Source: Eukaryota sp. TZLM1-RC (lineage: Eukaryota; Protista; Metamonada: BaSk clade). Taken from it: a DNA stretch of 64,000 bases. The notes under the pieces were generated by a model. That model ran no database searches. It worked only from the letters and a program-made list of their open reading frames with translations, and was not told where the DNA came from. A program made the position numbers and the translations under genes. Position 1 is the first letter of the stretch, and each line of letters starts with the position of its first letter. The stretch lies in assembly GCA_040285825.1 (NCBI GenBank), contig JAUPSS010000010.1:742881-806880 (forward strand), written 5' to 3'. Shown here in pieces: positions 25,950 to 62,221 of this stretch.

Positions 25950-27660
25950 TGTTGCCTAAAGTCTATTGTAGTAAAGAAAAGTCTGATTTATTTTCTATTC
26001 ATATTATATAAGCCTTAGGGCGCCAACACTGCTTCTTCCCTTTTTCAAAATAAATCAGCCTATATGAATATGAAATAAAAACTATATACAAATAACGAAA
26101 TAACTATAATAAATACATATAATCGATATAATATAAATAATCGATATAAACTAAGAATTAGCTCCTCTTCTTAATTCTACTACTACGTCTAGGCTTCTTA
26201 AGAGGCGTAGACTCATTGGAGGTACCTTGTCGTCGACTAGTGGTACGTTTTCCCATTTTCTTGTTATCCTTACTAAATAACTTATAAGCTTCTGAGTGTT
26301 TAACTGAATGGAGTGGCTCTTCCGTTGTCTCACCGCCAAACCACTGCACAGTACAGAAACTACCTGAATCAGAGTGGTATTCTGAGAGGATTTTCTCTAT
26401 AACGTGTTTTTCGGAATCGCCTGCAGCGACTGCCCTGAGGAACTCAATTTCCTGTGGATTTTCTGCGTTATAGATTTTGCAATCTTTCTTGGCAGCTTTT
26501 AATTCTGTGCCAGTAGTAAGATTCTTCAATAATAAAGTGGAATTGGAAGGAAGGTCAATAACTAAAAGTGGTCCATTCCAAGATCCATGCAATTTATTAT
26601 TTTGCTTGGTTGTACGTAAGACGTAGTCACCAATATTAAATGCTAAAAAACACGAATTAGTATTATCTACTGAAGACGGAGTATTTAATGTTTGGGATCC
26701 TACCAATGAACGAACTTCTTTCACTGTTTTTGGTCTAGGGATTCTCATCAAGGCTTCGATTTTTTTCTTACTTATAAATCTAGTTTTATCCTGGAAGGTA
26801 CTTCCTAAAATGTCGATAGGGTGTTTTGATGTTACGAATATACATTTACGTAAGCCTATATTTACACGTCTATTTCTGGTGCATTGGAGGACTCTTTGTA
26901 ATCTCTTACAAAATTCTTCGAATGTCGTTCCAACTATTATGATATCGTCAATGTATATGAAAACGCCGTCTATTTGGAAAATTTCCATCATTACGTTTTG
27001 AAAAACTGCTGGGATGTTCTTTAATCCGAAGCAAGCTCTTAAAAATGATTGACCTTCCAGGAATTGAGATTGATGTTTTCTCAATATCCTTCTCAGCTAC
27101 ATTCATCTGCCAGAAAGCTTTTAGTAAATCAAGCGTGGCGATGTAATCTGCTCTACTCAAAAATTCTAATATATCACTAATCCTAGGTAGATTAGGCTCT
27201 ACTGAAATCGTATGGGCATTAACTCCATCTTTACCGCTAAAGTCTCCAGTTAACCTGGGTTTCTTGCCGTCAGGATATATAACTAAGACAATAGGAGAGC
27301 TGAATTTATAATTAGATTCAACTGCATAACCCATTTCGATCAGTTCATCAAATATTTTGTTTGCTATTTCCATTTTGCTGGGATTTAACCGTCTAGCAAT
27401 CTTCTGTTCTATAGCATTCTCATCTCTAAAGGGGATTGTTAGAGGATTACAATAGATTCCTTTTCTATTAGGAATATCACTAAAAACATCGCTGAATAAT
27501 TTTAGTAGACTGGTTAATTTTAATTTATTATTACTATCATCTAAATTTATCTCACATCCAGATCTTGCTAATTGCTCCTCAAAATCAGAAGGACTTGGTG
27601 ATTGGTTATCTAAGTTCCCAATCGAATGTTGAGCGATCCTAGAGTCGAATTCTGATTTAC
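25950..27660 (-). mobile_element. Ty3/gypsy (chromovirus-like) retrotransposon remnant: RT, deleted RNaseH/integrase core, chromodomain, PPT and 79-bp 3' LTR
   Basis: SPIVLV..RLTGDF, LDLLKAFWQ, FGLKNIPAVFQ and YIDD; FNIGDYVL..WNGP (GPY/F); VIEKIL..VQW..TEEP chromodomain; PPT gaaaaagggaagaagcag; LTR TGTTG...CAACA at 25950-26028. Confidence 0.9.
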
Positions 27661-27789
27661 ACTTTTTTTACACCTTTTAATTGAAAATTGTTACCCTTTT
27701 TCACCAAGATTTCCTCGACTCTTCGCTCTTGATTTATAGATTTTATGTTTACTTAAATACTACTACTTTATTTTTAAACACTCACATGT

Positions 27790-30835: not shown

Positions 30836-32131
30836 CTACACCCTCAAATACCCACCTGGAATCCGCACTGGAGCTCTATTTCGAAAGTAAAAATACCCAA
30901 CAATACATAAGGCTATTATTAAAAAAGCGGACCCAATTAATTCCAAATGAAAATTAAAGGGTTGAGAAAAACAACCATATAAATAAGAAGTTTCTTGTTC
31001 ATTATCCAAAGTTATTATGGACAGGACAAAATTTTCATCATGATCCCAATCAATCTTTTTGCTCAGAAAGTTGTGCAATTGATTTGAGATAAAGTACAAT
31101 TTACCGTTGTTAACATCTATAGAAGATGGCCACAATTCTGAATGAAAAAATGACTGTTGATGCTTTATGATATCTTTTCCATCATTATAAAGGTCAGTCT
31201 TCAAAAGTCTCGAGTGGTCAACATCAGTCAAATATAAATGATTGAAGCTTGAAACAAACAGATCATCACTAGAACATTTTTTGTTACCCAGACGTTTGAC
31301 TTTTTTTGAACTTAGGTCAAAACTGAAAAAATCTCGAGAAGTCAAGGGGCTAAAATAGAGGGTTTTAAACTGGCAATCCATCGCGATACCGTGAATACCG
31401 ACATTTAAAGGAAACTCTTCAAACACTTTCTGATTGTCGATTGTAATCCAAATATCTTGAGAGTCGGTAGATTGGTGGTCAGAAACCAAGACTTCAAATA
31501 CATCATCTTCGTACACGTATTTTATCAACCTTCCCTTTGCCTTTTCTTTGCCTGTTTTAGAAATTCCAGCATCAGTGAAGTAAACAATGAGGGACACAGG
31601 GTCTAAAACTAGGTCAGAAAGGAAGGTAGATGATGTCAGCAAAGAGTCTGGAAGTCTTGAGACCCGTCTAACAAGATGATTGATAGGGTCATAAACAACA
31701 ATTTTTGGACCTGAAATCCATTGACCAGACTCATTTTTTCTGCCTTGGTCAAGAATCCACATCCAGCCGTCATGAGGATTAATTTCAAAGCCAAGAACGG
31801 ACTGAAGATTGTCGGGAGAAGCTGTTGCGTTGTTAAACTCGGGACAGGGGAACGGTATGAAGAGCTCTGTGGACGGATTGAAGAGAGCGAACGTAGCAGG
31901 AGTATCGAACGATGTAAAACGAGGAAGCGAAACATAAATGTGATGGCCATATGTACGGATAGTATGGGGTATAACCTGTTGATAAGAGTGATCTTTTACA
32001 TATGAAGCATAATCTTCCTTATTTGTGAAGGTAAAGTTTATAAATTGAAAGTGGAATGAATCAACTGTTTCGTAAGTGTAAGCGAATGCAGCAAGTAGAG
32101 AGATTAAGGTCAACAAAGAAAGAGAGGACAT
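30836..32131 (-). CDS. Yellow / major royal jelly protein family beta-propeller with signal peptide and C-terminal TM anchor
   Basis: YVSLPR, LQSVLG, WILDQG, PKIVVYD, VYFTDAG, HGIAM..LYFSPLTSR and WPSS motifs. Probable start MSSLSLLTLISLLAAFAY at 32131. TM segment LIGSAFLIIALCIVGYFYF. Confidence 0.85.
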   Translation of the reverse strand: MSSLSLLTLISLLAAFAYTYETVDSFHFQFINFTFTNKEDYASYVKDHSYQQVIPHTIRTYGHHIYVSLPRFTSFDTPATFALFNPSTELFIPFPCPEFNNATASPDNLQSVLGFEINPHDGWMWILDQGRKNESGQWISGPKIVVYDPINHLVRRVSRLPDSLLTSSTFLSDLVLDPVSLIVYFTDAGISKTGKEKAKGRLIKYVYEDDVFEVLVSDHQSTDSQDIWITIDNQKVFEEFPLNVGIHGIAMDCQFKTLYFSPLTSRDFFSFDLSSKKVKRLGNKKCSSDDLFVSSFNHLYLTDVDHSRLLKTDLYNDGKDIIKHQQSFFHSELWPSSIDVNNGKLYFISNQLHNFLSKKIDWDHDENFVLSIITLDNEQETSYLYGCFSQPFNFHLELIGSAFLIIALCIVGYFYFRNRAPVRIPGGYLRV

Positions 32132-33156
32132 AAAATCTGTGGAGAATTGCGAAGAACTGAAGTTGACAAATGAATGGCAACTATACACATTTTGGCTTCT
32201 TCAATTGCAAACATATGAAGCCATCTCCACTGGTTTCTTAAGGCAACCTTTGTTTCCCGATTATTACTGGAGTTGCAAGTTCTAGAATTACGAGGCAATA
32301 TAGCATGACATGTAGTCACGTGCGTTTGTCCTAAAAATATTGGTTTGTGTGCCATAAGAAGTTTCACCACCATTTTCAGAACAAATATTTTATTTTGTAT
32401 ATTAAATGCGTTATATGCGATGAAATTAAAATTAAAAGTGAATTCTTTTTATTGTAAGGTGTTGTTTTATTCCATTTACTGTTTCGACCAATACTGCTTT
32501 GCTCCTGAGATAATAGTTGTACGTCTGGAAGATTAATGCATGATCAATCCTGCAAATTTTGGAGAAGCAGCACTTAACCCTTTATTTAATTTCGTTTTTC
32601 CTATTTAAAAACATCACCTTCTCCAGCTGATTTATGCTCTAAAACTAAAATAATACAAATTTCTGTTGACTAGACGAATAGTTGGATTGGTGATTCTGCT
32701 GAGATTCGACGAAATTTACATATTGGAGACACTGTGAAAAACAGCTTCAGCAAAAACTTACAGAAATTTTTGGAGGTGGATTAGTAAGTTCCATTTTACC
32801 CATTCGTACAGAATGTCCATTATGGTTTTGCTTCGTAGTTTGACAAAATGGTAAAATTTTATGGCAACTTTAATCTATTTTTATGGACATTTGCTTCTCC
32901 ATGTTGTAAATTGTAATCGTCACTACAGCTGTCATTCTAACTCCATTTATTTAATTGTAAATCAGGCAACTTTTAAGTCAACAGTTGCCGATGCTCTTTT
33001 CAGCAAAGCAAAGCCTTTCATCTTTATTGGCAAAATCATTTGCTGAATCCTTACAATCATCAACAGTGAACTCAATATCCTCAATACATATCCTCAATAG
33101 TTCTTTCCAAGTAATTAGATTCTAAGTAATATCTAATAGTAATTCTAAGAATCGAC

Positions 33157-33903
33157 ATGGAACCTCCACCATGTCTACCCTATTCTATCTACATTGCAGG
33201 AGGTGGTGGGAAGACTAGTCTCATGTACACTCTTGCACATTTCTATGCTCAACTAAACCTTCGTGTTGTGGTCACCACCACCACCAAACTGGCTCCCGAA
33301 GTGCCTTCCCATATTGTTCCTTCCACTATTGTTTCATCAGACACTAATTATATTCGATCCAAAATCTCGTCTGCCTCTTCACCTTCTCTGGTTGTATCCT
33401 CCACTGTAACCCACAACACCACCACCAGACTCGTTGGCTTTCCTCCTGCAGTTGTTCAATCATTCACTCAGTTCTGTGATGTTCTCATTGTAGAAGCTGA
33501 TGGATCTAGACAATTACCCTTGAAATGTCCAGCAGAACATGAACCTCAGATTGATGCCAACGCAAACACGGTTTACTATGTTGTAGGTGCTGATTGTTTA
33601 GGTGAGGTAGTGAATGATGTTGTCTTTAGGAGTGAATTAATTCCAAACATTACCCAATTTAATAATATTGTTACGCCTTGCTTGGTGGCTGATTTGATTA
33701 AGTCTGATAAAGGAGGACTCAAAATGGTACCTGATGATGCTGATTTCAATGTAGTTATTAATAAAAAAGAGTTAAAACCAGTAGAATGTAGAATTTTAGC
33801 TAAGTTGTTAGTAAAAACGCCAAGAATTGATAATGTTTTTTTGACTAGCCTTAAGGATTTAATTAATTGCTCAATGGAGAAAATTAATAAAAACGAATTG
33901 TAA
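33157..33903 (+). CDS. yqeC: YqeC-like selenium-dependent hydroxylase accessory protein (P-loop)
   Basis: GGGGKTSLMYTLA, VVVTTTTKL, VEADGSRQLPLKCPAEHEP, VVGADCLG..V.R.E, GGLK.VP and VVINK form the full ordered YqeC signature. Intact, intronless, 248 aa. Confidence 0.9.
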   Translation: MEPPPCLPYSIYIAGGGGKTSLMYTLAHFYAQLNLRVVVTTTTKLAPEVPSHIVPSTIVSSDTNYIRSKISSASSPSLVVSSTVTHNTTTRLVGFPPAVVQSFTQFCDVLIVEADGSRQLPLKCPAEHEPQIDANANTVYYVVGADCLGEVVNDVVFRSELIPNITQFNNIVTPCLVADLIKSDKGGLKMVPDDADFNVVINKKELKPVECRILAKLLVKTPRIDNVFLTSLKDLINCSMEKINKNEL

Positions 33904-34600
33904 AGTTAATTTTCTCTTATTTTGGGATACTTTGTTTCGTTTGTATATACAATGGTCACCTAATAAACATTTAGTGTCACATTTACCAGTGATTTTGATA
34001 TTGGATCATTTAATCAATGATATATCTCATTTTAAAAGGGCTGATATTCAAATGAAAATGAATAATAATGGCAGTGTTTTCATTAGTACGATAGTTGTAA
34101 TATTTTTACTTTGTGTCTAAACAAGCTAAACCCACCAGGAATAGAACGCTAAAGTAATACATTGTTGCAAATTGTTTAAAAGTAAGCAAAACTTGATGAA
34201 AAGCGTCTTATCGAGAGAGAAGTACTTTTAAGTTTTTATGGCTGGTGTGACATTTTAAAGGCGAATTTTGGTACATGCTTCAAGACAAAATGGATTATTA
34301 GTTGTACTTTTTACTCTAGTACCACCTGTAGTGGAATTTGTGATGGACCAATGCTGTATCGCAGTTTTAGAGAAAGAATGAGAATATGACACGTCAGCAT
34401 GTGATATACTGTGAAACCTACCAACTCTATTCAACAACAACATTTGACTAAGTAAAGGGGCTATTTCCTCCTCTTGATGAACTTGGAACATTTTTGAGCT
34501 ATATCCGATCAGCAAAGGACAGGAGGAATTTGGACATATCTTGAGATACTGTTGTGGATGAGGTTGATTGTTATGATTTCATCAAATTCAACAATCAACA

Positions 34601-37600
34601 ATGGTACATCTCTCCATTCTTCTTCTGCTCTCATGTTACACTGCCTTGGCCACACAAGTCAACTGGATATCTGTTCATGATGATAGTTTTGGTGACGTTA
34701 ATAATTGGTCATTTTCAGAAAATGAAGACTTTTTCACTCCTGGTTTAATCTTTGTGGTTGATCTTGATGTTCAAATAACTTTATATACAGATTTACTCCC
34801 CAACATCCAAGAAATTAGACTTGGTGGTGGTTCCTCCTCACCATCTCTCAAAATCAGTGCATCTCTTTCAGTTGAGAACTTTGTTTGGAACAGCGGTAGT
34901 CTAGAGATCGACACCAAGTTATTCAACATTCACTCTACCCTTGACTTGGCGTCGCATAGCCCCAAGGAACTACTTAAAGGTACTTTACTTTCATTTGGTT
35001 TTGTCCGAGTTTTTCATTCTTGCATACTTACACTTAAGCACGACTCTGCACTTAGTGTTCGCCATGTTTATAATGATGACAATAAAGTCTTAATATCCCC
35101 TTCATCCGGAATTTTCGAAATTACAAAACCTGCTGGAGAATCAGAGCCACAAGTTGAGTTTTTTGTTCCAATCGAATTGGAAATTAATAGTCATTTAAAA
35201 ATCGGTGTTACTGCACATTTAGTTGGAAATGTTGTGGTTAAAGAAGGTGCGGTTTTGGAGTTTAACCATGATTCGGAAATAAACAGTGAAATAGAGTTGA
35301 ATGGAGAAAATTCTGAGCTCAAAGTTGATGGTTGTACTGTTCAATTTAAGTCAAAATCCTATTATTCTGCAGTAGAAAATGATTTATTAGTTTATTTTAA
35401 CTTTAGGGATCCTCCTAGTAATGGTTACTTCAGTGATTTTTTTGGTAATTTCTATGCGAAAATTATAGGTGATACTCACCACAATGATGATCATGTTTCA
35501 ATGTCAGGTAACAATGGCCATTTACTTAGTAGTTTCAGGCCTGCCCCTACTGGTCCTTTTACAATCTACATGGAATATGAAGTTAGATCCTCATTTAACT
35601 CATGGTCCACAACATCTCAAACGGCTCAATTTGGTATTGATTCTAGTCAAGAATCTTGTAGTTTTGTTACCGGTTTTCGTAGAGATTTTATTGATTACTA
35701 TTATGTTTGGTCGATTTTTCGTGGGTTTTTTGTTGCCTTACTATCGTCTGCTTCATTTACACAGAGTATTCACGGGGAATCAGATTTCGTCGGTTCTTTT
35801 CATCCCCTTGCTTACATTGTATCAGACACTCAAGTAATGGTGATGCACCTGTCTGGCGGTCATTTTTATTATAATTCACATGCTTCATCTCCAATCGGTT
35901 CATGCCAACGGACATTGCCTTTAGATTTTGGTCGTTTGTTCAATTCAAATGGAGTTGTGATCTCTAACCATAATGGTAAACTCCGTGAGTACAGAGTTTA
36001 TGACAGAGCTCTTACTACTTCTTCAACATTGTTTTCGCAATCAGGAGAAGAAGGAATTGCCGAAACTATTACTGTTCCTGAATTCATTGGGTCTGGTTTT
36101 GTCACTCTGACTGAAGGTAGTACCATTTCCCCGATTCCTGCAGAATTAGACCATATTGATTATCCTGGGAGCACAATTTTTGATAGCCAGTTTACTTGTC
36201 TTGGAAACACTGTGGTTGTCATAACGGGAAATGTTGTTGTTAATTCAGGGGAAGATATTTCTGTGAATTGCATGATAAAACTTGAAGGTAGCATGACTAT
36301 CATCAGTGGAAATGTTATTTTCTCCAAAGATTCTCAGTTTGATGGTAGTCTTATCATTGAAGAAGATGGACTGGTTTCATTTAAGGACGCTGTTTACACA
36401 TTTACTACTGATTCTACCCTTGAACAATGTGCCAATTGTGTTGCTACCACAGAGAATACAGTTTTAAATATTGACGGACTTTGGAAAGGAGAGTCTATGC
36501 TTATTTTTCGGAAAGAATTTAATTTGCTTGAGAATTCTAGAATAGAGACTTTAACTTTTGCCCTGGATTTTTCTGGTCTGTATGAATATGAATCAGAGTA
36601 TTTCAACTTTTTAAACATAGTTAATCTTTCTATATTGTCTGGTGATATTTACTTTTTGCTTGAACCCAATGAAGTTGTAGAGTTTGAGTCCTTTGATGTT
36701 AAAGGTGGATCTGTGTTTTTTATCAATGGTGATCTCAAAACAAGTACTTTTACAATCAGTTCTGGTTCTACTTCTTGTGTTGCGTTTACTAACACTATAC
36801 TGAATTCCTTTAATACTCTTTCTCTACAAAATGGTCATTTAAGCTTTGAATATGATGATAGTCTGGATTTGGCATTTGAGGTTGACTTGGAAAATTCTGA
36901 GCTTACTTTGAAAAATTTTGTTAATTATAACTTTGATGAACTCAAATTAATAGATTCTACTAGAAATGGTGCTGGTAATTTGGTAGCCAAGAGTTTGTCA
37001 TTTGCCAATAGTGAATTTGCTGAAAGCGGCGAAACAATTTGTAATGAAAATTGTCAAATTTTAGATCATTCCCCTAATAACAACAAAATAAGTGACCTTC
37101 ATAAGCTTACATTTAATAGTGGAGGTCAAATTAGTTCTGGAAATGCTAGGTTGGAAATATTAGATGGACAATTCATTTTACCTTTAGATTTGGTTTTCCA
37201 ACTCGATTCTACACTTATTGTTTCAACCTCATCTCAAACAGATTTTCAAATATTGGGTACACTGACTATTAAAGAAGAAGGTGCTTTGGTAATTGAGGAT
37301 CCATTTGAATCTGAAGGAACTTTTATTGTAAATGGTAAATTAGAATTAGATTCAGATACTACCATTGGTGGAACTTTGAAGGTTTCAGATGGTGGGGAAG
37401 CTGTTTTCAAAGGGGATTCTTATACTTTTAACGAAAATTCCAAGCTTGAAGTTCATCATCCAAATACCCTAGTTTTACAGGAACCTATTGAATTAACTAT
37501 TGAAGGTACTTATAAAGGAATTGGTTCCATCACTCACTCACATGGAAAGTTGACGTTTACTTCTGGTTCAAAGGTGGATACTGGAGATTTTATTGTTAAA

Positions 37601-40600
37601 ACTGACAATGAATTAAATTTTAATGGTGCTGAATTTAAGTCATTAAACTTGCTAAAAATAGAAAGAGGTGAGGTTACTTTTGACTATGATGACACTTTTG
37701 AAAATATTGACATTGCCTCAATAAAACTCGAAGAAGGTTCTGTTAGCTTTACCAATGGTGATTTAAAGGCAAATACCTTTACTATTAACTCTGAATCTAC
37801 GGCTAGTGCTTCATTCATTAATACTAATCTAGATTCTTTAAGTGATTTCAGTTCAAATAATGGTATTATTGAGTTCCATTATGAGGATGATCTCACCATT
37901 TCCACAGATTTTGATCTTGATAATTCTGTCTTGGAATTAACAAACTCAGATACTATTTATTCTTTTATTGATGTTAATCTCCTCTCCTCAACTCGGAAGG
38001 GTAATGGAAATTTAATGGTTCAAGATTTAAGTTTTTCAAATACTACTTTTGCTGGTAATTCCCAAACTAAATGTACCCAAAGTTGTACTGTTTTCACTAG
38101 TGAATCTAACACTATCATTGTCAGTGATTCTCATGAATTACTATTTGATGCTAATGGTAATATTGATTCTGAATTCCCTGTCAATTTTCAAATTAATTCG
38201 GCTAGTTTTATTTTAAAGAAACACAATTCGATTTCTACAAATACTGAAGTTACAGTATCAACCTCATCTCAAACAGATTTTCAAATTTTGGACACATTGG
38301 TTATTGAAGAAGGAGGTGCTTTGGTAATTGAGGATTTATTTGAATTTGAAGGAACTTTTATTGTAAATGGTAAATTAGAATTAGAAAAAGATAATACCAT
38401 TGGTGGTGCTTTAAAGGTTTCAGATGGTGGTGAAGCTATTTTGAAAGGATATTCTTATACATTTAACGAAAATTCCAAGCTTGAAGTTCATCCAAATACC
38501 CTAGTTTTACAGGAACCTATTGAATTAACAATTGAAGGTACTTATAAAGGAATTGGTTCCATCACTCACTCACATGGAAAGTTGACGTTTACTTCTGGTT
38601 CAAAGGTGGATACTGGAGATTTTATTGTTAAAACTGACAATGAATTAAATTTTAATGGTGCTGAATTTAAGTCATTAAACTTGCTAAAAATAGAAAGAGG
38701 TGAGGTTACTTTTGACTATGATGACACTTTTGAAAATATTGATATTGCCTCAATAAAACTCCAAGAAGGTTCTGTTACCTTTACCAATGGTGATTTAAAG
38801 GCAAATACCTTTACTATTAACTCTGAATCTACGGCTAGTGCTTCATTCATTAATACTAATCTAGATTCTTTAAGTGATTTCACCTCAAATAATGGTAATA
38901 TTCAGTTCAATTATGATGATGATCTCACCATTTCCGGAGATTTTGATCTTGATAATTCTGTCTTGGAATTAACAAACTCAGATACTATTTATTCTTTTAG
39001 TGATGTTAATTTCCTCTCGTCAACTCGAAAGGGTAATGGAATTTTAATGGTTCAAGATTTGAGTTTTTCAAATACTACTTTTGCTGGTAATTCCCAAACT
39101 AAATGTACCCAAAGTTGTACTGTTTTCACTAGTGAATCTAACACTATCATTGTCAGTGTTTCTCATGAATTACTATTTGATGCTAATGGTAATATTGATT
39201 CTGAATTCCCTGTCAATTTTCAAATTAATTCGGCTAGTTTTATTTTAAAGAAACACAATTCGATTTCTACAAATACTGAAGTTACGGTATCAACCTCATC
39301 TCAAACAGATCTCCAAATTTTGGACACATTGGTTATTGAAGAAGGAGGTGCTTTGGTAATTCAGGATTTATTTGAATTTGAAGGAACTTTTATTGTAAAT
39401 GGTAAATTAGAATTAGATTCAGATAATACCATTGGTGGTACTTTAAAGGTTTCAGATGGTGGTGAAGCTATTTTGAAAGGAGATTCTTATACATTTAACG
39501 AAAATTCCAAGCTTGAAGTTCATCCAAATACGCTAACTTTACAGGAACCTATTGAATTAACAATTGAAGGTACTTATAAAGGAATTGGTTCCATCACTCA
39601 CTCACATGGAAAGTTGACGTTTACTTCTGGTTCAAAGGTGGATACTGGAGATTTTATTGTTAAAACTGACAATGAATTAAATTTTAATGGTGCTGAATTT
39701 AAATCCTTAAACTTGCTAAAAATAGAAAGAGGTGAGGTTACTTTTGACTATGATGACACTTTTGAAAATATTGACATTGCCTCAATAAAACTCGAAGAAG
39801 GTTCTGTTAGCTTTACCAATGGTGATTTAAAGGCAAATACCTTTACTATTAACTCTGAATCTACGGCTAGTGCTTCATTCATTAATACTAATCTAGATTG
39901 TTTAAGTGATTTCACCTCAAATAATGGTAATATTCAGTTCAATTATGATGATGATCTCACCATTTCCGGAGATTTTGATCTTGATAATTCTGTCTTGGAA
40001 TTAACAAACTCAGATACTATTTATTCTTTTAGTGATGTTAATCTCCTCTCCTCAACTCGGAAGGGTAATGGAAATTTAATGGTTCTAGATTTAAGTTTTT
40101 CAAATACTACTTTTGCTGGTAATTCCCAAACTAAATGTACCCAAAGTGGTACTGTTTTCACTAGTGAATCTAACACTATCATTGTCAGTGATTCTCATGA
40201 ATTACTATTTGATGCTAATGGTAATATTGATTCTGAATTCCCTGTCAATTTTCAAATTAATTCGGCTAGTTTTATTTTACAGAAACACAATTCGATTTCT
40301 ACAAATACTGAAGTTACGGTATCAACCTCATCTCAAACAGATCTCCAAATTTTGGACACATTGGTTATTGAAGAAGGAGGTGCTTTGGTAATTGAGGATT
40401 TATTTGAATTTGAAGGAACTTTTATTGTAAATGGTAAATTAGAATTAGATTCAGATAATACCATTGGTGGTACTTTAATGGTTTTAGATGGTGGTGAAGC
40501 TATTTTTAAAGGAGATTCTTATACATTTAACGAAAATTCCAAGCTTGAAGTTCATCCAAATACCCTAGTTTTACAGGAACCTATTGAATTAACAATTCAA

Positions 40601-43600
40601 GGTACTTATAAAGGAATTGGTTCCATCACTCACTCACATGGAAAGTTGACGTTTACTTTTGGTTCAAAGGTGGATACTGATGATTTTATTGTTAAAACTG
40701 ACAATGAATTAACTTTTGATGGTGCTGAATTTAAATCCTTAAACTTGCTAAAAATAGAAAGAGGTGAGGTTACTTTTGACTATGATGACACTTTTGAAAA
40801 TATTGACATTGCCTCAATAAAACTCGAAGAAGGTTCTGTTACCTTTACCAATGGTGATTTAAAGGCAAATACCTTTACTATTAACTCTGAATCTACGGCT
40901 AGTGCTTCATTTACTAACACTAACCTAGATTCTTTAAGTGATTTCACCTCAAATAATGGTAATATTCAGTTCAATTATGATAATGATCTCACCATTTCCA
41001 CAGATTTCAATTTTGATAATTCTGTCTTGGAATTAACAAACTCAGATACTATTTATTCTTTTATTGATGTTAATTTCCTCTCGTCAACTCGAAAGGGTAA
41101 TGGAATTTTAATGGTTCAAGATTTGAGTTTTTCAAATACTACTTTTGCTGGTAATTCCCAAACTAAATGTACCCAAAGTTGTACTGTTTTCACTAGTGAA
41201 TCTAACACTATCATTGTCAGTGTTTCTCATGAATTACTATTTGATGCTAATGGTAATATTGATTCTGAATTCCCTGTCAATTTTCAAATTAATTCGGCTA
41301 GTTTTATTTTAAAGAAACACAATTCGATTTCTACAAATACTGAAGTTACGGTATCAACCTCATCTCAAACAGATCTCCAAATTTTGGACACATTGGTTAT
41401 TGAAGAAGGAGGTGCTTTGGTAATTCAGGATTTATTTGAATTTGAAGGAACTTTTATTGTAAATGGTAAATTAGAATTAGATTCAGATAATACCATTGGT
41501 GGTACTTTAAAGGTTTCAGATGGTGGTGAAGCTATTTTGAAAGGAGATTCTTATACATTTAACGAAAATTCCAAGCTTGAAGTTCATCCAAATACCCTAA
41601 TTTTACAGGAACCTATTGAATTAACAATTCAAGGTACTTATAAAGGAATTGGTTCCATCACTCACTCACATGGAAAGTTGACGTTTACTTCTGGTTCAAA
41701 GGTGGATACTGGAGATTTTATTGTTAAAACTGACAATGAATTAAATTTTAATGGTGCTGAATTTAAATCCTTAAACTTGCTAAAAATAGAAAGAGGTGAG
41801 GTTACTTTTGACTATGATGACACTTTTTGAAAATATTGACATTGCCTCAATAAAACTCGAAGAAGGTTCTGTTAGCTTTACCAATGGTGATTTAAAGGCA
41901 AATACCTTTACTATTAACTCTGAATCTACGGCTAGTGCTTCATTCATTAATACTAATCTAGATTCTTTAAGTGATTTCACCTCAAATAATGGTAATATTC
42001 AGTTCAATTATGATGATGATCTCACCATTTCCGGAGATTTTGATCTTGATAATTCTGTCTTGGAATTAACAAACTCAGATACTATTTATTCTTTTAGTGA
42101 TGTTAATCTCCTCTCCTCAACTCGGAAGGGTAATGGAAATTTAATGGTTCTAGATTTAAGTTTTTCAAATACTACTTTTGCTGGTAATTCCCAAACTAAA
42201 TGTACCCAAAGTGGTACTGTTTTCACTAGTGAATCTAACACTATCATTGTCAGTGATTCTCATGAATTACTATTTGATGCTAATGGTAATATTGATTCTG
42301 AATTCCCTGTCAATTTTCAAATTAATTCGGCTAGTTTTATTTTACAGAAACACAATTCGATTTCTACAAATACTGAAGTTACGGTATCAACCTCATCTCA
42401 AACAGATCTCCAAATTTTGGACACATTGGTTATTGAAGAAGGAGGTGCTTTGGTAATTGAGGATTTATTTGAATTTGAAGGAACTTTTATTGTAAATGGT
42501 AAATTAGAATTAGATTCAGATAATACCATTGGTGGTACTTTAATGGTTTTAGATGGTGGTGAAGCTATTTTTAAAGGAGATTCTTATACATTTAACGAAA
42601 ATTCCAAGCTTGAAGTTCATCCAAATACCCTAGTTTTACAGGAACCTATTGAATTAACAATTCAAGGTACTTATAAAGGAATTGGTTCCATCACTCACTC
42701 ACATGGAAAGTTGACGTTTACTTTTGGTTCAAAGGTGGATACTGATGATTTTATTGTTAAAACTGACAATGAATTAACTTTTGATGGTGCTGAATTTAAA
42801 TCCTTAAACTTGCTAAAAATAGAAAGAGGTGAGGTTACTTTTGACTATGATGACACTTTTGAAAATATTGACATTGCCTCAATAAAACTCGAAGAAGGTT
42901 CTGTTACCTTTACCAATGGTGATTTAAAGGCAAATACCTTTACTATTAACTCTGAATCTACGGCTAGTGCTTCATTTACTAACACTAACCTAGATTCTTT
43001 AAGTGATTTCACCTCAAATAATGGTAATATTCAGTTCAATTATGATAATGATCTCACCATTTCCACAGATTTCAATTTTGATAATTCTGTCTTGGAATTA
43101 ACAAACTCAGATACTATTTATTCTTTTTATTGATGTTAATTTCCTCTCGTCAACTCGAAAGGGTAATGGAATTTTAATGGTTCAAGATTTGAGTTTTTCA
43201 AATACTACTTTTGCTGGTAATTCCCAAACTAAATGTACCCAAAGTTGTACTGTTTTCACTAGTGAATCTAACACTATCATTGTCAGTGTTTCTCATGAAT
43301 TACTATTTGATGCTAATGGTAATATTGATTCTGAATTCCCTGTCAATTTTCAAATTAATTCGGCTAGTTTTATTTTAAAGAAACACAATTCGATTTCTAC
43401 AAATACTGAAGTTACGGTATCAACCTCATCTCAAACAGATCTCCAAATTTTGGACACATTGGTTATTGAAGAAGGAGGTGCTTTGGTAATTCAGGATTTA
43501 TTTGAATTTGAAGGAACTTTTATTGTAAATGGTAAATTAGAATTAGATTCAGATAATACCATTGGTGGTACTTTAAAGGTTTCAGATGGTGGTGAAGCTA

Positions 43601-46600
43601 TTTTGAAAGGAGATTCTTATACATTTAACGAAAATTCCAAGCTTGAAGTTCATCCAAATACCCTAATTTTACAGGAACCTATTGAATTAACAATTCAAGG
43701 TACTTATAAAGGAATTGGTTCCATCACTCACTCACATGGAAAGTTGACGTTTACTTCTGGTTCAAAGGTGGATACTGGAGATTTTATTGTTAAAACTGAC
43801 AATGAATTAAATTTTAATGGTGCTGAATTTAAATCCTTAAACTTGCTAAAAATAGAAAGAGGTGAGGTTACTTTTGACTATGATGACACTTTTGAAAATA
43901 TTGACATTGCCTCAATAAAACTCGAAGAAGGTTCTGTTAGCTTTACCAATGGTGATTTAAAGGCAAATACCTTTACTATTAACTCTGAATCTACGGCTAG
44001 TGCTTCATTCATTAATACTAATCTAGATTCTTTAAGTGATTTCACCTCAAATAATGGTAATATTCAGTTCAATTATGATGATGATCTCACCATTTCCGGA
44101 GATTTTGATCTTGATAATTCTGTCTTGGAATTAACAAACTCAGATACTATTTATTCTTTTAGTGATGTTAATCTCCTCTCCTCAACTCGGAAGGGTAATG
44201 GAAATTTAATGGTTCTAGATTTAAGTTTTTCAAATACTACTTTTGCTGGTAATTCCCAAACTAAATGTACCCAAAGTTGTACTGTTTTCACTAGTGAATC
44301 TAACACTATCATTGTCAGTGATTCTCATGAATTACTATTTGATGCTAATGGTAATATTGATTCTGAATTCCCTGTCAATTTTCAAATTAATTCGGCTAGT
44401 TTTATTTTACAGAAACACAATTCGATTTCTACAAATACTGAAGTTACGGTATCAACCTCATCTCAACCAGATCTCCAAATTTTGGACACATTGGTTATTG
44501 AAGAAGGAGGTGCTTTGGTAATTGAGGATCCATTTGAATCTGAAGGAACTTTTATTGTAAATGGTAAATTAGAATTAGATTCAGATACTACCATTGGTGG
44601 AACTTTGAAGGTTTCAGATGGTGGGGAAGCTGTTTTCAAAGGGGATTCTTATACTTTTAACGAAAATTCCAAGCTTGAAGTTCATCATCCAAATACCCTA
44701 GTTTTACAGGAACCTATTGAATTAACTATTGAAGGTACTTATAAAGGAATTGGTTCCATCACTCACTCACATGGAAAGTTGACGTTTACTTCTGGTTCAA
44801 AGGTGGATACTGGAGATTTTATTGTTAAAACTGACAATGAATTAAATTTTAATGGTGCTGAATTTAAGTCATTAAACTTGCTAAAAATAGAAAGAGGTGA
44901 GGTTACTTTTGACTATGATGACACTTTTGAAAATATTGATATTGCCTCAATAAAACTCCAAGAAGGTTCTGTTACCTTTACCAATGGTGATTTAAAGGCA
45001 AATACCTTTACTATTAACTCTGAATCTACGGCTAGTGCTTCATTCATTAATACTAATCTAGATTCTTTAAGTGATTTCACCTCAAATAATGGTAATATTC
45101 AGTTCAATTATGATGATGATCTCACCATTTCCGGAGATTTTGATCTTGATAATTCTGTCTTGGAATTAACAAACTCAGATACTATTTATTCTTTTAGTGA
45201 TGTTAATCTCCTCTCCTCAACTCGGAAGGGTTATGGAAATTTAATGGTTCTAGATTTAAGTTTTTCAAATACTACTTTTGCTGGTAATTCCCAAACTAAA
45301 TGTACCCAAAGTTGTACTGTTTTCACTAGTGAATCTAACACTATCATTGTCAGTGATTCTCATGAATTACTATTTGATGCTAATGGTAATATTGATTCTG
45401 AATTCCCTGTCAATTTTCAAATTAATTCGGCTAGTTTTATTTTAGAGAAACACAATTCGATTTCTACAAATACTGAAGTTACGGTATCAACCTCATCTCA
45501 ACCAGATCTCCAAATTTTGGACACATTGGTTATTGAAGAAGGAGGTGCTTTGGTAATTGAGGATTTATTTGAATTTGAAGGAACTTTTATTGTAAATGGT
45601 AAATTAGAATTAGATTCAGATACTACCATTGGTGGAACTTTAAAGGTTTCAGATGGTGGTGAAGCTATTTTTAAAGGGGATTCTTATACTTTCAACGAAA
45701 ATTCCAAGCTTGAAGTTCATCCAAATACCCTAATTTTACAGGAACCTATTGAATTAACAATTGAAGGTACTTATAAAGGAATTGGTTCCATCACTCACTC
45801 ACATGGAAAGTTGACGTTTACTTCTGGTTCAAAGGTGGATACTGGAGATTTTATTGTTAAAACTGACAATGAATTAAATTTTAATGGTGCTGAATTTAAG
45901 TCATTAAACTTGCTAAAAATAGAAAGAGGTGAGGTTACTTTTGACTATGATGACACTTTTGAAAATATTGATATTGCCTCAATAAAACTCCAAGAAGGTT
46001 CTGTTACCTTTACCAATGGTGATTTAAAGGCAAATACCTTTACTATTAACTCTGAATTTACGGCTAGTGCTTCATTCATTAATACTAACCTAGATTCTTT
46101 AAGTGATTTCACCTCAAATAATGGTAATATTCAGTTCAATTATGAGGATGATTTTACCATTTCCACAGATTTTGATCTTGATAATTCTGTCTTGGAATTA
46201 ACAAACTCAGATACTATTTATTCTTTTATTGATGTTAATCTCCTCTCCTCAACTCGGAAGGGTAATGGAAATTTAATGGTTCAAGATTTAAGTTTTTCAA
46301 ATACTACTTTTACTGGTAATTCCCAAACTAAATGTACTCAAAGTTGTACTGTTCAAGCTGAAACTTCACTTATCAATCAAATCACAGATCAACATAGGTT
46401 GTCGATTACCCCAGTTGTTGTTTTCTCCCACACCGTCTTTTACTTGGCTTCATCATCAATTATTTTCGAACAAAAGGTTAGCTTAATTGAACTTGAAGTT
46501 TTTGGTTCTTTTGGCTCCAGTGTTGAAGTATTTGGACTATGCGAATTACATAACAGTTCTTTTTTCAATATTGCCACCTTTGATAATAATTTGCTTTTTC

Positions 46601-49600
46601 ACCATTCTCTTTCATGTCACAATGTGGTGTATCAATGGACGGTGGATGTGCAAGGTAATCTATTGTTGAGCAACGGTTCGTCTAATTCATTTCTGAATGA
46701 TCTCATCATTCATTCGTCTGTGTATTTTGAACTTGATGCTTTTATGGTCATTGACTCAACAGCCTATCTTCTTCAAAATTCAAACCTTACTTCTGATCTA
46801 GGCCTGATCTTGAGGGAAAACGCTGAGGTTTTTGTCAGTGGTTACTGGAATAGTCCCTTGAAAGTACTGTCGCCTACTGGTGGGCTGTTGGTTTTTGACT
46901 CACTCTCAGTGCTCACCTTTAAGTCAATCAATGCTTTATCATCAACTATTCGTATTTTTTCTACTATATCTGATATTGCGACTGTTGATTTGCGGAATTC
47001 TTCATTATTAATTGAATTTCCCTCTGCAATTTATATTCATAATGTTATGTGTCAAAATTCAACTATCATCATTTCTGATGTTCCAGCGCCTGTTACGTTG
47101 GGTGAAGTGCAAGCTTTGGACTCGGAATTTATTTTTAGTGATCTTGATCCTTTTCTTCTAATAGAAGTGTTAGTTTCGAAAGGGAGTACCTTTCACTTTC
47201 ACACTGGGCAGTTGTGTGTGATCTCCAATGTTTCACAGTCAGATTCATTATTAACTGGAACAGACCCCTACATATTTCTTAATGAACTAGTTTTTGATGT
47301 TGAAATCAACTCTGGCGACAACTGTTGTCCAACAGAAAGTTGTCATTTGACACTTCCATTTGACTATGCTTGGTCTGTCAATGATTACTTGAATGTAGAT
47401 GTACTTGGCACTGAGCAAATTGATCAACATGAATACAGCTACCATTTTGATCTTGTTTTGCGGAATAGTTGGGGGGTTGAAGAGCAATTTCGGTCAGTGT
47501 TTGTCAATTTTACTGTTAATAATCAGTTTGTGTTAACTTCATTTCAAGTTGATCTTTGTCCATTCACTATTATTGAATCTTCTCAACCACCGACTATTGG
47601 TGGTCCTGTTGTTTTTTCTGGTGTCAATTTTGGTTCTTTACTTCATCCTATCCATGTTACTGTGGATACGCTCAATATTTTATTGTTATCCTCAGAATTT
47701 GATCATTCTTCTATAACTTTTCATGTTGGTTCATTTTCAGGATGCCACAATGCAACTTTCTTTCCTACTAACAGAGCCCCTACAGAATTTGAATTTTGTT
47801 ATCAAATTCCGGTGATTATTTCACTTTCCCCTCGACTGGTTCCTTTTTCCTCTGATATTGTCATTTCTGGCATCAACTTTGGTGATAAACCAAATTTTGA
47901 GCTTTATGTAGCTGATACTTATGCTGACTCTGAACCCTTCACTGTTACTTACAGCATGGCTATCCTACATCTTTCATATGTATGCACGTCCAGCTCAGTC
48001 ATCAATATTGCCGTTGTTGTTGGAAACCAATTCAGCAACTTTGTGGATGTGGAATTAATTACTCCTTCGTTTGAGGTAGTTCCCGACATTTTACCAAGTT
48101 CTGGAGGCATAATTACCTTAGAAGGAAATTCTTTCAGCAAATTATTTGAAAGCGAATGCTTAGAATATGCTGAAATCACTTGTAGTGATGGTTTGGTTTA
48201 TTTTGAACCCTCTCGTGATCATTTTGACCGTGTTTCTGTTGGTATCTATCAATTGGATGAATCAACTGAAATTGTTGATTGTATTATTTCTTTTATTCCA
48301 GCTCTCCATGATTCTTTTTCTGTTATAATTGCAGTTATTGAGGCTTTTCCCGATGACGGAGTGTGCTTTGTCAATACTGAGTGTAAGGCTATATTATCTA
48401 GTGTTGAGAGAGGTCTTGATTTTACTACCCTCCATCCCCATGTCAAGGACGAGTCTGCAATTCGTATTGTCAGTTACGTTGCACAAACCAATTATTCTGA
48501 ATTAGTATTTCTTCCTTTTTCCACCAGTCCTGGTCTCGAGTTGTGTTCCAACAAGTCTATTTCTTGCTTTTCTATTTCAAATTTTCCTCCCATCGCCGAA
48601 GTTATCTCCATCTCACCAACTAGGCTCATTTATGATGGCCCTTCCCGAACAAGTTGTGTCGAAATTATTGGAATCAATTTCGATAATTACTTTGATTTTG
48701 AAAGTGCCTTCGCTATTTCGGATTTCTCAATAACAACTAGTAAAGAAGATGCAGTTAGTGTCAGTGCATGTCTAACTGGTCTCGCCATTGGTTCATTTCA
48801 ACTATCCACCCACAGTATGCTCAGTAGTGTTGAAACTGCTTTTACAATTGAAATTTTGGATCCACTTGTTATGCCTACTTTGTTCACCAATAGTAGAGTT
48901 TATTTTCTATTTGACTCTCCATCAAGTGTTAACATCCAGATTTCGTCCCTTAGTTTTTTATTAAATCCTGGATTCAACTTTCTCAATCTTGAACAACTAA
49001 ACGAATGTCCAGTCACTATTCAAGCGGGGGATGGTTCTAATTCCCGTCATATTTTGGTAGATTGTGTTGATTCTTTAGTCATACAACCCTCTCTGTTCTT
49101 CATCAATGTCAGATCATTGGCGAAGATTCCAATTCCTGATGGTTTGAGTGGTGTTTTTAACTTGGCATGTGATTCTTCCACTTGTACCACTGGAGATGTT
49201 TCCACTATTGACTCTGAATTAAATGTCATGGTAGAGTTTTCAACCACTGGGAACTTTGTATTGAGCTTAAGCCTTGTTGAAGGTGATAATTCTATGACCA
49301 AGGATTTTGTGGTCAGTGTTCTCCGTGAGTCGTCCTTTTTTGTCAGCATTTCTGAGCTTTTGTATTATGACAACTCTACTGTGATGGTAGCTGTTCAGAA
49401 TTTCATGTCACAAGGTACATTCCAATGGTCCAGCTCTGAACATGCTGCAAATATACACAGTTTATCATATACAGACTCGCTGACGATGATATCATTAAAG
49501 CTTCCCCTAATTGAAGCCCCTGGAAGTTTTCTGTTTGAACTCTATTGGATTTATCCCCTGGCAATGGGACATAAAGTGTTTGTTTCTAATTTTACTGTTC

Positions 49601-61471: not shown

Positions 61472-62210
61472 ATGGATGTCGTTGAACCTCCACCAGCAAT
61501 TAAGCTAGCAGCAGACAAAACAGCCAAGTTCTTTGTTCGAAATGGTCCCAGCTTCTTTGAAAAAGTACGCCGTGAAAAGGGAGATCTTCCTGAATTTGTC
61601 TTCCTCAAAGAGGACCACCCCTACAATGCATTCTACCAACTCTGTGTCAAGAAATACCAAGAAAACCCTGATCTCCTTGAACGCAAGCCTGTTGCTACTG
61701 AACGTCCTCCTGCACCCCCTGAAAAATCAGTGACGGAAGTATCTGCTCAACTAGCCAGATTCAGAGAACGACTCCCTATCCCCTCCACTAAACCCCTCTC
61801 CCTTGACTTTGCCATCTCGCACCCTTCCGACATTGATCTCATTACACTAGAAACAATGAAGGTCACGGCACAGTATGTGGCCAAAAATGGAAGAACTTTT
61901 CTGGCTACATTAGTGAAACAAACTTCTGATGTACCATCGCTAAGCTTTCTCAATCCGTCTTCTCCTTTGTTTTCATTCTTTACAGTTTTGGTTCATAATT
62001 ATCAAAAAATTCAAAAATTTTCCACGCTAAAAGATATGAAAGAAAGGATTCATAATTTTACTCTTATTGAACAGGACAAGTTTTCGTATCTTTCAAAAAT
62101 TAAGGAAAGAGCTGGATGGGATCGAATGCAAAAGAAAAAAGCCGAAGAAACTTCTCAATTAGAAGAAGAATCTGTAGATTGGAGTGATTTTGTTGTTGTT
62201 CAGACTGTTG

Positions 62211-62221
<11 letters not shown>
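61472..62221 (+). CDS. SF3A1: Splicing factor SF3A1/Prp21 (two SURP domains plus Prp21 motif), minimal 249-aa form
   Basis: PPPAIK..DKTAKFFVRNG..FVFL..HPYNAFY (SURP1); MKVTAQYVAKNGRTFL..FLNP (SURP2); VDWSDFVVVQTVDF (Prp21 signature). Confidence 0.9.

What the first reader, a model, noticed from the sequence alone, without database searches (positions are those of the whole stretch)
33157..33903. Intact yqeC in a eukaryotic chromosome: candidate eukaryotic selenium-cofactor (Se-dependent molybdenum hydroxylase) pathway
Seen: a complete, uninterrupted YqeC-signature ORF embedded among eukaryotic genes and retroelements, with a GC-richer 5' and AT-richer 3' end like neighbouring host genes, which argues against simple contamination. 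Established: YqeC with YqeB and SelD marks the labile-selenium cofactor trait that matures Se-dependent xanthine dehydrogenase, purine hydroxylase and nicotinate dehydrogenase in anaerobic prokaryotes, distinct from selenocysteine and selenouridine. Inference: this probably anaerobic protist acquired that third selenium-utilisation system by lateral transfer. I know it only as a prokaryotic trait but cannot verify novelty here. No partner genes lie in this window.
Basis: partly seen in the sequence, partly recalled or inferred. Interest (0 to 1): 0.8.

Follow-up and report, generated by a model that had tools for sequence, protein, structure and literature searches.

The report
Bacterial yqeC gene in Skoliomonas
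An anaerobic soda-lake protist carries an intact, long-resident gene of bacterial origin (yqeC) that in bacteria marks the maturation of selenium-dependent molybdenum enzymes. This makes a eukaryotic version of that pathway plausible, but it is not shown here.

Summary
Window 33157-33903 (+) is an uninterrupted 248-codon ORF that scores 154 bits against NCBIfam TIGR03172 YqeC (cut-off 73) and 118 bits against Pfam PF19842.

The window is contig JAUPSS010000010.1 (1.38 Mb) of GCA_040285825.1, which by elimination is Skoliomonas litria. The gene lies among eukaryotic genes (Surp/PRP21, RCC1, Bax-inhibitor, reverse transcriptase).

All three sequenced Skoliomonas species carry a yqeC orthologue in Mb-scale eukaryotic contigs. 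The three form one clade (SH-aLRT 95 / UFBoot 99) and have host-like GC (36-39% against 48-70% in bacteria). This points to one old lateral transfer, not contamination.

The protein keeps 33 of 38 family-conserved positions. Its model (pLDDT 92) is a SIMIBI-class P-loop GTPase fold. In bacteria yqeC sits beside XDH-XdhC-YqeB-MocA and is often fused to MocA-like cytidylyltransferases.

The pathway claim is only partly supported. No partner gene lies in the window. YqeB, XdhC and selenocysteine machinery elsewhere in this genome are unchecked notes of this scan. A molybdenum hydroxylase, MocA, selD and transcription could not be tested.

YqeB was already reported in the metamonad Spironucleus in 2014. 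I found no report of eukaryotic YqeC. The scan holds this stretch only as the present finding, not on other DNA.

The parts
33157..33903 (+). yqeC coding sequence, 248 codons plus TAA; single exon
   Evidence: ORF list; TIGR03172 154 bits against cut-off 73; PF19842 118 bits; AF2 model pLDDT 92.1, pTM 0.90
33199..33219 (+). P-loop / G1 motif GGGGKTS (residues 15-21)
   Evidence: Read from the sequence; G15-T20 present in 82-83 of 84 prokaryotic rows
33274..33288 (+). TTTTK motif (residues 40-44), a family signature after strand 2
   Evidence: T42 and T43 kept in 82-83 of 84 rows
33490..33546 (+). VEADGS...LPLKCPAEHEP block (residues 112-130): Walker-B/G3-like E113-A-D115-G116 and invariant K123 and P130
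   Evidence: E113, D115, G116, K123 and P130 invariant in 84 of 84 rows
33628..33630 (+). codon of invariant R158 in the FRSE motif
   Evidence: R in 84 of 84 rows
33760..33771 (+). G4-like motif NKKE (residues 202-205), a variant of the family's NKxD
   Evidence: N in 76, K in 72, D in 65 and E in 11 of 84 rows; RCL has NKSE and GEMRC has NKID
32132..33156 (.). 1-kb AT-rich spacer shared with the divergently oriented MRJP/yellow gene; presumed promoter region, no feature defined
   Evidence: Flank 32189-33156 has GC 33.0%; short-read unitigs match 32579-32880 exactly. A promoter is inferred only.

Best explanation
SHOWN: This is a genuine, intact yqeC gene. An ancestor of the genus Skoliomonas (free-living anaerobic metamonads of soda lakes) acquired it from a bacterium. 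It was then inherited vertically in all three sequenced species and has drifted to host base composition. The protein is a SIMIBI-class P-loop NTPase. It has G1 (GGGGKTS), G3-like (EADG) and G4-like (NKxD/E) motifs, so it is most likely a GTPase. INFERRED: It keeps its bacterial job as a nucleotide-driven accessory factor in making or inserting the molybdopterin-cytosine-dinucleotide cofactor of a xanthine-dehydrogenase-family enzyme. In that role it would work with a MocA-type cytidylyltransferase much as MobB works with MobA, alongside XdhC, YqeB and selenophosphate synthetase, which supply the labile selenium ligand. The client would be a laterally acquired bacterial-type molybdenum hydroxylase, plausibly for anaerobic purine breakdown in a bacterivore. 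Identity and lateral origin: about 0.95. The pathway part: about 0.5.
For: Identity: TIGR03172 scores of 154, 139 and 135 bits for S. litria, GEMRC and RCL, against a cut-off of 73. Conservation: 33 of 38 positions that are at least 85% conserved in 84 prokaryotic YqeC are kept in S. litria, and 29 of 38 in RCL. Three eukaryotic hosts: an exhaustive phmmer search puts GEMRC1_002955 (E 4.9e-33) and RCL1_003792 (E 5e-29) above every prokaryote, the best of which is 5.7e-25. Both lie in 2.5-3.6 Mb contigs among kinases, HEAT, HlyIII, MULE and LTR-retroelement genes. One clade: SH-aLRT 95.4 / UFBoot 99 under LG+F+G4 and SH-aLRT 87 under PMSF. Amelioration: gene GC is 36-39% and GC3 21-33%, against 48-70% GC in three bacterial yqeC genes. 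Fold: pLDDT 92; VIA-align Z 12-14 to SRP54/FtsY/FlhF, about 11 to IcmF-MeaB and UreG; Foldseek finds the same classes. Functional link: a bacterial operon reads XDH(FAD, FeS, Mo)-XdhC-YqeB-YqeC-MocA, and yqeC is adjacent to a MocA-like gene elsewhere. Six of 10 sampled long YqeC representatives are fusions with a MobA-like NTP transferase, in either order. Plausibility in metamonads: YqeB in Spironucleus (PMC3916229) and laterally acquired xanthine dehydrogenase/oxidase in free-living Trepomonas (PMC4967989). Unchecked scan notes report YqeB, XdhC, tRNA-Sec, SBP2 and selenoproteins in this same genome.
Against: No partner gene lies in the window or within 10 kb of yqeC in the other two species. 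I saw no sequence of YqeB, XdhC, MocA, selD, Moco-biosynthesis genes or a molybdenum hydroxylase from any Skoliomonas. Those are notes of other first readers or are unknown. The genome paper does not mention selenium, molybdenum or xanthine. Transcription is untested. In C. difficile a yqeC deletion had no growth phenotype on purines, whereas yqeB and selD deletions did. Peng et al. 2016 state that only YqeB and YqeC together mark the trait. The GTPase assignment rests on motifs and fold only. The three orthologues are only 38-41% identical, so the gene evolves fast.
Confidence: 0.55

Rival explanations
1. The gene is functional and under selection, but in Skoliomonas the YqeC NTPase serves a different client. 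Candidates are a non-selenium molybdenum or tungsten enzyme, or general selenium or metal trafficking linked to the organism's selenoproteome. There would be no selenium-dependent molybdenum hydroxylase.
For: YqeC alone is not a marker of the trait (Peng 2016). A yqeC deletion is silent in C. difficile. The strongest bacterial link found here is to MocA-type cytidylyltransferase, not to selenium genes. The Spironucleus supplement list that names YqeB names no other molybdenum or xanthine protein. The fold class includes many metal and cofactor chaperones. No Skoliomonas molybdenum hydroxylase is on record in the paper or in the scan's notes.
Against: The scan notes YqeB and XdhC in the same genome (unchecked), which would be the full accessory set. 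Every bacterial context read here that held other cofactor genes pointed to XDH-family enzymes. Selenocysteine machinery implies that selenophosphate is available (unchecked).
Confidence: 0.27
2. The gene is a leftover of an old transfer that is no longer used: an orphan still open by chance or under weak constraint.
For: It has no neighbouring partners and no expression evidence. The three species share only 38-41% identity. The C-terminal third in S. litria is very AT-rich, with GC 24.5% in the last 147 nt.
Against: Three independent lineages each keep a 241-250-codon ORF without a stop. All three clear the curated YqeC threshold by about 60-80 bits. The invariant catalytic-type residues are kept. 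The AT-rich C-terminal part still models at pLDDT of about 88 or higher. Neutral drift to 60% divergence would not spare these residues.
Confidence: 0.08
3. The gene is bacterial contamination or a chimeric join in the assembly.
For: The cultures are xenic. The public short-read unitigs I could lay covered only scattered 151-nt pieces of the flanks and none of the gene.
Against: Gene GC is 38.8% and GC3 30.9%, like the host ORFs, and the flanks are 33%. The gene lies 773 kb inside a 1.38-Mb contig, between eukaryotic genes. Orthologues sit in two other, separately assembled Skoliomonas genomes at eukaryotic loci. The three form a clade apart from all sampled prokaryotes.
Confidence: 0.02

Closest known systems
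Bacterial/archaeal YqeC (TIGR03172, PF19842; E. coli b2876, E. faecalis EF_2564, C. difficile CD2071)
   Same: Same family by curated HMM (154 bits). Same length, same invariant motifs (GGGGKTS, TTTTK, EADG, K123, P130, R158, NKx[D/E]) and the same predicted fold.
   Different: Encoded in a eukaryotic nuclear chromosome as a solitary gene, without the usual XDH/XdhC/YqeB/MocA neighbours. Only 30-39% identical to any prokaryotic member. AT-rich host-like codon use.
YqeB-family genes of Spironucleus salmonicida (Xu et al. 2014, PMC3916229)
   Same: The other marker of the selenium-cofactor trait, also in an anaerobic metamonad with selenocysteine machinery. The authors proposed selenium use independent of selenocysteine.
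   Different: A different protein family (TIGR03309, not TIGR03172). No YqeC was reported there, and none labelled Spironucleus appeared among my named hits. Any evolutionary link between the two acquisitions is untested.
MobB, the P-loop GTPase partner of the MobA guanylyltransferase in MGD cofactor synthesis
   Same: Works-like analogy. Both are small P-loop NTPases genetically coupled, by adjacency or fusion, to a MobA-like nucleotidyltransferase of molybdenum cofactor synthesis.
   Different: No MobB match appeared in the sequence or fold searches of solved structures. The partner here is the cytidylyl (MocA) type. The analogy is my inference, not a test.
SIMIBI-class NTPases: SRP54/FtsY/FlhF, and the G3E cofactor chaperones MeaB/IcmF, UreG, HypB
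   Same: Whole-length fold match, Z 12-14 (SRP GTPases) and about 11 (IcmF-MeaB, UreG). Profile hits to FtsY and ArsA P-loop regions. G1, G3 and G4 motifs are present.
   Different: Sequence identity is 10-19%. It has none of the accessory domains of SRP GTPases. The metal-binding motifs of G3E proteins were not examined.
Laterally acquired xanthine dehydrogenase/oxidase of the free-living diplomonad Trepomonas sp. PC1 (Xu et al. 2016, PMC4967989)
   Same: Shows that bacterial-type purine-oxidising molybdoenzymes have entered free-living anaerobic metamonads by gene transfer. That is the kind of client YqeC would need.
   Different: A different organism and a different gene. No accessory YqeB or YqeC was discussed there, and selenium is not mentioned in that paper.

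Membership tests
YqeC (NCBIfam TIGR03172 / Pfam PF19842) | Whole-protein HMM score above the curated cut-off | tested here: met
   154 bits against 73.05; 118 bits against 27.6. The GEMRC and RCL orthologues score 139 and 135 bits.
YqeC (NCBIfam TIGR03172 / Pfam PF19842) | N-terminal P-loop GGGGKT[ST] | tested here: met
   Residues 15-21 read GGGGKTS.
YqeC (NCBIfam TIGR03172 / Pfam PF19842) | Invariant E-A-D-G block, K123, P130 and R158 | tested here: met
   All present. These positions are invariant in 84 of 84 prokaryotic rows.
YqeC (NCBIfam TIGR03172 / Pfam PF19842) | C-terminal NKxD-type motif | tested here: met
   The motif reads NKKE. E replaces D, as in 11 of 84 prokaryotic rows.
Selenium-cofactor (SDMH) utilisation trait: SelD + YqeB + YqeC (Zhang 2008; Peng 2016) | YqeC present | tested here: met
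Selenium-cofactor (SDMH) utilisation trait: SelD + YqeB + YqeC (Zhang 2008; Peng 2016) | YqeB (TIGR03309) in the same genome | not testable with these tools
   Known only from unchecked scan note s1-637405. A search with a verified bacterial YqeB returned over 8000 bacterial hits and listed no eukaryotic one. The by-sequence look-up was blank.
Selenium-cofactor (SDMH) utilisation trait: SelD + YqeB + YqeC (Zhang 2008; Peng 2016) | Selenophosphate synthetase (SelD/SPS) in the same genome | not testable with these tools
   Implied by scan notes on tRNA-Sec, SBP2, Sec synthesis genes and several followed-up selenoprotein genes. No selD sequence was seen here.
Selenium-cofactor (SDMH) utilisation trait: SelD + YqeB + YqeC (Zhang 2008; Peng 2016) | An XDH-family molybdenum hydroxylase client with Moco/MCD synthesis (MocA, XdhC) | not testable with these tools
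   XdhC is known only from unchecked note s1-656891. There is no note on a hydroxylase, and the genome paper mentions none.
Selenium-cofactor (SDMH) utilisation trait: SelD + YqeB + YqeC (Zhang 2008; Peng 2016) | Clustering of yqeC with hydroxylase, XdhC, YqeB or MocA genes (typical in prokaryotes, not strictly defining) | tested here: not met
   tblastn with the seven proteins of bacterial operon L006 finds only yqeC in the window and in the 20-kb RCL and GEMRC loci.
Selenium-cofactor (SDMH) utilisation trait: SelD + YqeB + YqeC (Zhang 2008; Peng 2016) | Enzyme activity dependent on labile, non-selenocysteine selenium | not tested
   Needs 75Se labelling or Se/Mo-dependent activity assays.
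SIMIBI-class P-loop GTPases | Fold plus G1, G3 and G4 motifs | tested here: met
   Z 13.9, rmsd 3.5 A over 184 residues to SRP54; Foldseek probability 1.0 to IcmF, FtsY, HypB and UreG; motifs. Nucleotide specificity and hydrolysis were not tested.

The most novel reading that the evidence does not exclude
Skoliomonas would have the first complete eukaryotic selenium-dependent molybdenum hydroxylase system. It would consist of laterally acquired YqeC, YqeB, XdhC and MocA, a bacterial-type XDH-family enzyme, and the host's selenophosphate synthetase. It would give a possibly mitochondrion-less anaerobic bacterivore a clostridial-style selenium-dependent purine catabolism. This would be the third selenium-utilisation trait in Eukarya, possibly shared with diplomonads that carry YqeB.
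Probability: 0.4. Interest if true: 0.7.

Novelty: new member of a known kind. Interest (0 to 1): 0.5.

Why it matters
The labile-selenium cofactor of molybdenum hydroxylases is the least understood of the three biological uses of selenium, and it is treated as a prokaryotic trait. A eukaryote that has kept yqeC through the divergence of three species shows that at least part of the machinery can live in a nuclear genome. By unchecked notes the same genome also has yqeB, xdhC and a selenoproteome. This extends a forgotten 2014 observation of YqeB in Spironucleus. It also gives a concrete test: look for the client enzyme, and for selenium- and molybdenum-dependent purine use, in a culturable protist. 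The frequent YqeC-MocA fusions point to a role for YqeC in handling the cytosine-dinucleotide cofactor. That may help explain why its deletion is silent in C. difficile.

Tried and rejected
1. Finding the Skoliomonas YqeB. A word search with a verified bacterial YqeB (L006:9193-9996, TIGR03309 362 bits) returned 7995 hits, and the 120 listed were all close bacterial relatives. The scan's by-sequence look-up was blank, which per the operators means nothing.

2. Expression and junction reads. Only three low-depth runs of one sample were offered, and none is on record as RNA. I laid them on window 31000-36500 (5501 letters, within the operators' limit). They gave a few exact 151-nt unitigs on the flanks and none on yqeC. 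This counts neither for nor against transcription or the join.

3. Complex prediction of a native bacterial YqeC + YqeB pair (P0013 + P0121). The verdict was 'no answer', score 0.00. It is not evidence either way.

4. Donor lineage. The nearest prokaryotic rows (P0287, P0011, P0107) join the eukaryotic clade with weak support. They come from unnamed metagenomic contigs with ordinary bacterial neighbours. The donor is unresolved.

5. Synteny among the three Skoliomonas loci. None was found beyond retroelement and kinase-domain similarity.

6. Other eukaryotes with YqeC. Twenty representative hits were looked up by name. All that carried names were bacterial: Clostridium, Alkaliphilus, Ardenticatena.

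7. The 'careful' PMSF tree did not finish within the time limit in four calls on two data sets. I report the quick PMSF tree and a finished LG+F+G4 tree instead.

8. Supplementary data of the Skoliomonas genome paper, including the expression table, are not held.

No spliced model was needed, because the gene is a single ORF.

Full report
OBSERVATION. Window 33157-33903 (+) is a single uninterrupted ORF of 248 codons from ATG to TAA. Its product scores 154 bits (E 4.7e-45) against NCBIfam TIGR03172, 'selenium cofactor biosynthesis protein YqeC'. The curated cut-off is 73. It scores 118 bits against Pfam PF19842.

WHERE IT IS. The exact protein is encoded once in public assemblies: at 776,037-776,783 of JAUPSS010000010.1, a 1.38-Mb contig of GCA_040285825.1.
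- The two closest relatives are annotated proteins of 'Eukaryota sp. TZLM3-RCL' and 'Eukaryota sp. GEM-RC1'. [quoted passage not shown] 2024 (PMC11316075).
- That paper describes a third skoliomonad, S. litria, with 16 contigs, 31.9 Mb and 35.8% GC. The scan lists 16 pieces for this genome.
- By elimination the window is therefore S. litria. This is an inference, because the record's name is masked.
- The window holds clearly eukaryotic genes: a Surp/PRP21 splicing factor, RCC1 repeats, Bax-inhibitor-1 and a reverse-transcriptase fragment, and an MRJP/yellow gene divergent from yqeC.

NOT A CONTAMINANT; ONE OLD TRANSFER.
- An exhaustive phmmer search of 1.84 billion representatives gives 3863 hits. 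The top two are GEMRC1_002955 (E 4.9e-33, 40% identity) and RCL1_003792 (E 5e-29). Both rank ahead of every prokaryote, the best of which is 5.7e-25.
- Both lie deep inside contigs of 2.5-3.6 Mb. Their neighbours are protein kinases, a HEAT-repeat protein, HlyIII, a MULE transposase and an LTR retroelement.
- Both pass TIGR03172, at 139 and 135 bits.
- In a tree of 84 sequences the three eukaryotic proteins form one clade. Support is SH-aLRT 95.4 / UFBoot 99 under LG+F+G4 and SH-aLRT 87 under the site-heterogeneous quick search. The donor is unresolved.
- The three loci share no synteny.
- Gene GC is 38.8%, 39.3% and 35.7%, and GC3 is 21-33%. This matches the host loci and contrasts with 48-70% GC in three bacterial yqeC genes.
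- The three orthologues are only 38-41% identical. Even so, S. litria keeps 33 of the 38 positions that are at least 85% conserved among 84 prokaryotic YqeC, and RCL keeps 29. That is the pattern of purifying selection, not decay.
- The NCBI model of the RCL gene starts at an internal Met and lacks the P-loop. The true ORF (L002:9923-10648, 241 aa) has it.

WHAT THE PROTEIN IS.
- No YqeC structure has been solved. A profile search of PDB sequences gives only weak P-loop-region hits, to FtsY (E 5e-7) and ArsA.
- An AlphaFold2 model built on 86 sequences is confident, with pLDDT 92.1 and pTM 0.90.
- It matches SIMIBI-class NTPases over its whole length. VIA-align gives Z 12-14 to SRP54/FtsY/FlhF, about 11 to ParA/MinD/Get3, 10.9 to the MeaB-like domain of IcmF and 10.8 to UreG. 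Foldseek agrees.
- The family carries a G1 P-loop (GGGGKT[ST]) and an invariant E-A-D-G block. It also carries an NKxD motif, with N in 76, K in 72 and D in 65 of 84 rows. In S. litria that motif reads NKKE.
- I therefore read YqeC as a small GTPase of the class that includes cofactor- and metal-insertion chaperones. This rests on fold and motifs, not on an assay.

WHAT IT DOES IN BACTERIA.
- One contig (L006) shows the canonical arrangement: XDH FAD, FeS and Mo subunits, then XdhC, YqeB (TIGR03309, 362 bits), YqeC and MocA (TIGR03310, 198 bits).
- Elsewhere yqeC is followed directly by a MocA-like gene or is fused to one.
- Twenty-four of the 150 best representatives are 400 aa or longer. I sampled eight of these and two shorter long forms of about 370 aa. 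Six are YqeC + MobA-like NTP-transferase fusions, in both domain orders. Two carry a LysR HTH domain, one a HAD domain, and one has no second domain I could recognise.
- The recurrent fusion is a strong functional link to the cytidylyltransferase that makes the molybdopterin-cytosine-dinucleotide cofactor of XDH-family enzymes. By analogy with MobA/MobB, I propose that YqeC is the NTPase partner of MocA in cofactor delivery. This is an inference.
- The link to selenium comes from phylogenetic profiling. YqeB and YqeC co-occur with SelD and with molybdenum hydroxylase loci (PMC2276186; PMC5029168).
- Genetics is sparse. In C. difficile the yqeB deletion phenocopies the selD deletion on xanthine and urate. 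The yqeC deletion is silent and shows only a hint of a role in a double mutant (PMC11448449).

THE PATHWAY CLAIM.
- No partner lies in the window or within 10 kb of yqeC in the other two species.
- I had no tool that reads the rest of this eukaryotic genome.
- The scan's index holds unchecked first-reader notes on other pieces of the same genome: a YqeB gene (s1-637405), a prokaryotic XdhC (s1-656891), tRNA-Sec, SBP2 and Sec-synthesis genes. It also holds followed-up notes on several selenoprotein genes.
- If these notes hold, then SelD, YqeB and YqeC, the published signature of the trait, would be complete apart from the client enzyme. I could not verify any of them.
- No note and no paper reports a Skoliomonas molybdenum hydroxylase.
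- The literature makes the idea plausible. Spironucleus salmonicida has YqeB-family genes, and its authors suggested selenium use beyond selenocysteine (PMC3916229). Free-living Trepomonas acquired xanthine dehydrogenase and oxidase from bacteria (PMC4967989).
- I put the full-pathway reading at about 0.4-0.5.

RIVALS.
- (a) A conserved NTPase that now serves another client: 0.27.
- (b) An unused relic: 0.08. This is disfavoured by three intact, motif-perfect orthologues.
- (c) Contamination or a chimeric join: 0.02.

NOVELTY. The protein is an ordinary YqeC. What is new is its host.
- I found no paper that mentions YqeC in a eukaryote, and the three genes are annotated as hypothetical proteins.
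- The companion marker YqeB was already reported in a metamonad in 2014, so the general idea is not new.
- I class the gene as a new member of a known kind, of moderate interest. Interest would rise if the client enzyme and selenium dependence were found.

LIMITS.
- Transcription and read-level support for the junctions could not be tested.
- The complex prediction gave no answer.
- The careful PMSF trees did not finish.
- Most homologues carry no taxon name, so absence from other eukaryotes is not established.

Noticed in passing
L002:9923-10648 (Skoliomonas sp. RCL, JAUPST010000001.1): The NCBI model RCL1_003792 (215 aa) starts at an internal Met and lacks the P-loop. The open frame extends 26 codons upstream to an ATG and then reads VGGGGKTSS, giving a 241-aa full-length YqeC (135 bits to TIGR03172).
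   Followed up: yes
window 30836-32131 (-): A major-royal-jelly/yellow family protein (PF03022, 45 bits) with a C-terminal hydrophobic stretch is the divergent neighbour of yqeC. The scan also noted it as s1-645251. I saw no link to yqeC.
   Followed up: partly
window ORFs 30836-32131, 11798-13492, 17094-18380, 61472-62221, 33157-33903: Several ORFs of this window show a marked 5'-to-3' fall in GC, for example 0.47 to 0.30. This may be a general feature of S. litria genes. It is much weaker in the GEMRC and RCL yqeC genes.
   Followed up: partly
P0244, P0248, P0252, P0266, P0291, P0328, P0004 (prokaryotic/metagenomic): YqeC is recurrently fused to a MobA-like (MocA-type) NTP transferase in both domain orders. 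Other fusions carry a LysR HTH (P0003, P0005, P0242, P0338) or a HAD hydrolase (P0278). The MocA fusion suggests a MobA/MobB-like partnership.
   Followed up: partly
window 1619-2467 (+): ORF with a ParB-like nuclease domain (PF08857, 108 bits) in this eukaryotic contig.
   Followed up: no
window 34601-51948 (+): Two very long ORFs (2409 and 2923 aa) of highly repetitive sequence, with a 445-aa ORF between them. They look like one giant repeat protein broken by frame changes. The scan already noted this (s1-644613, s1-645566).
   Followed up: no
L007:15650-19785 (Skoliomonas sp. GEMRC): An LTR-retrotransposon gene set (aspartic protease, RT, RNase H, integrase) lies 5 kb downstream of the GEMRC yqeC. 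Related RT fragments lie at window 26158-27667.
   Followed up: no
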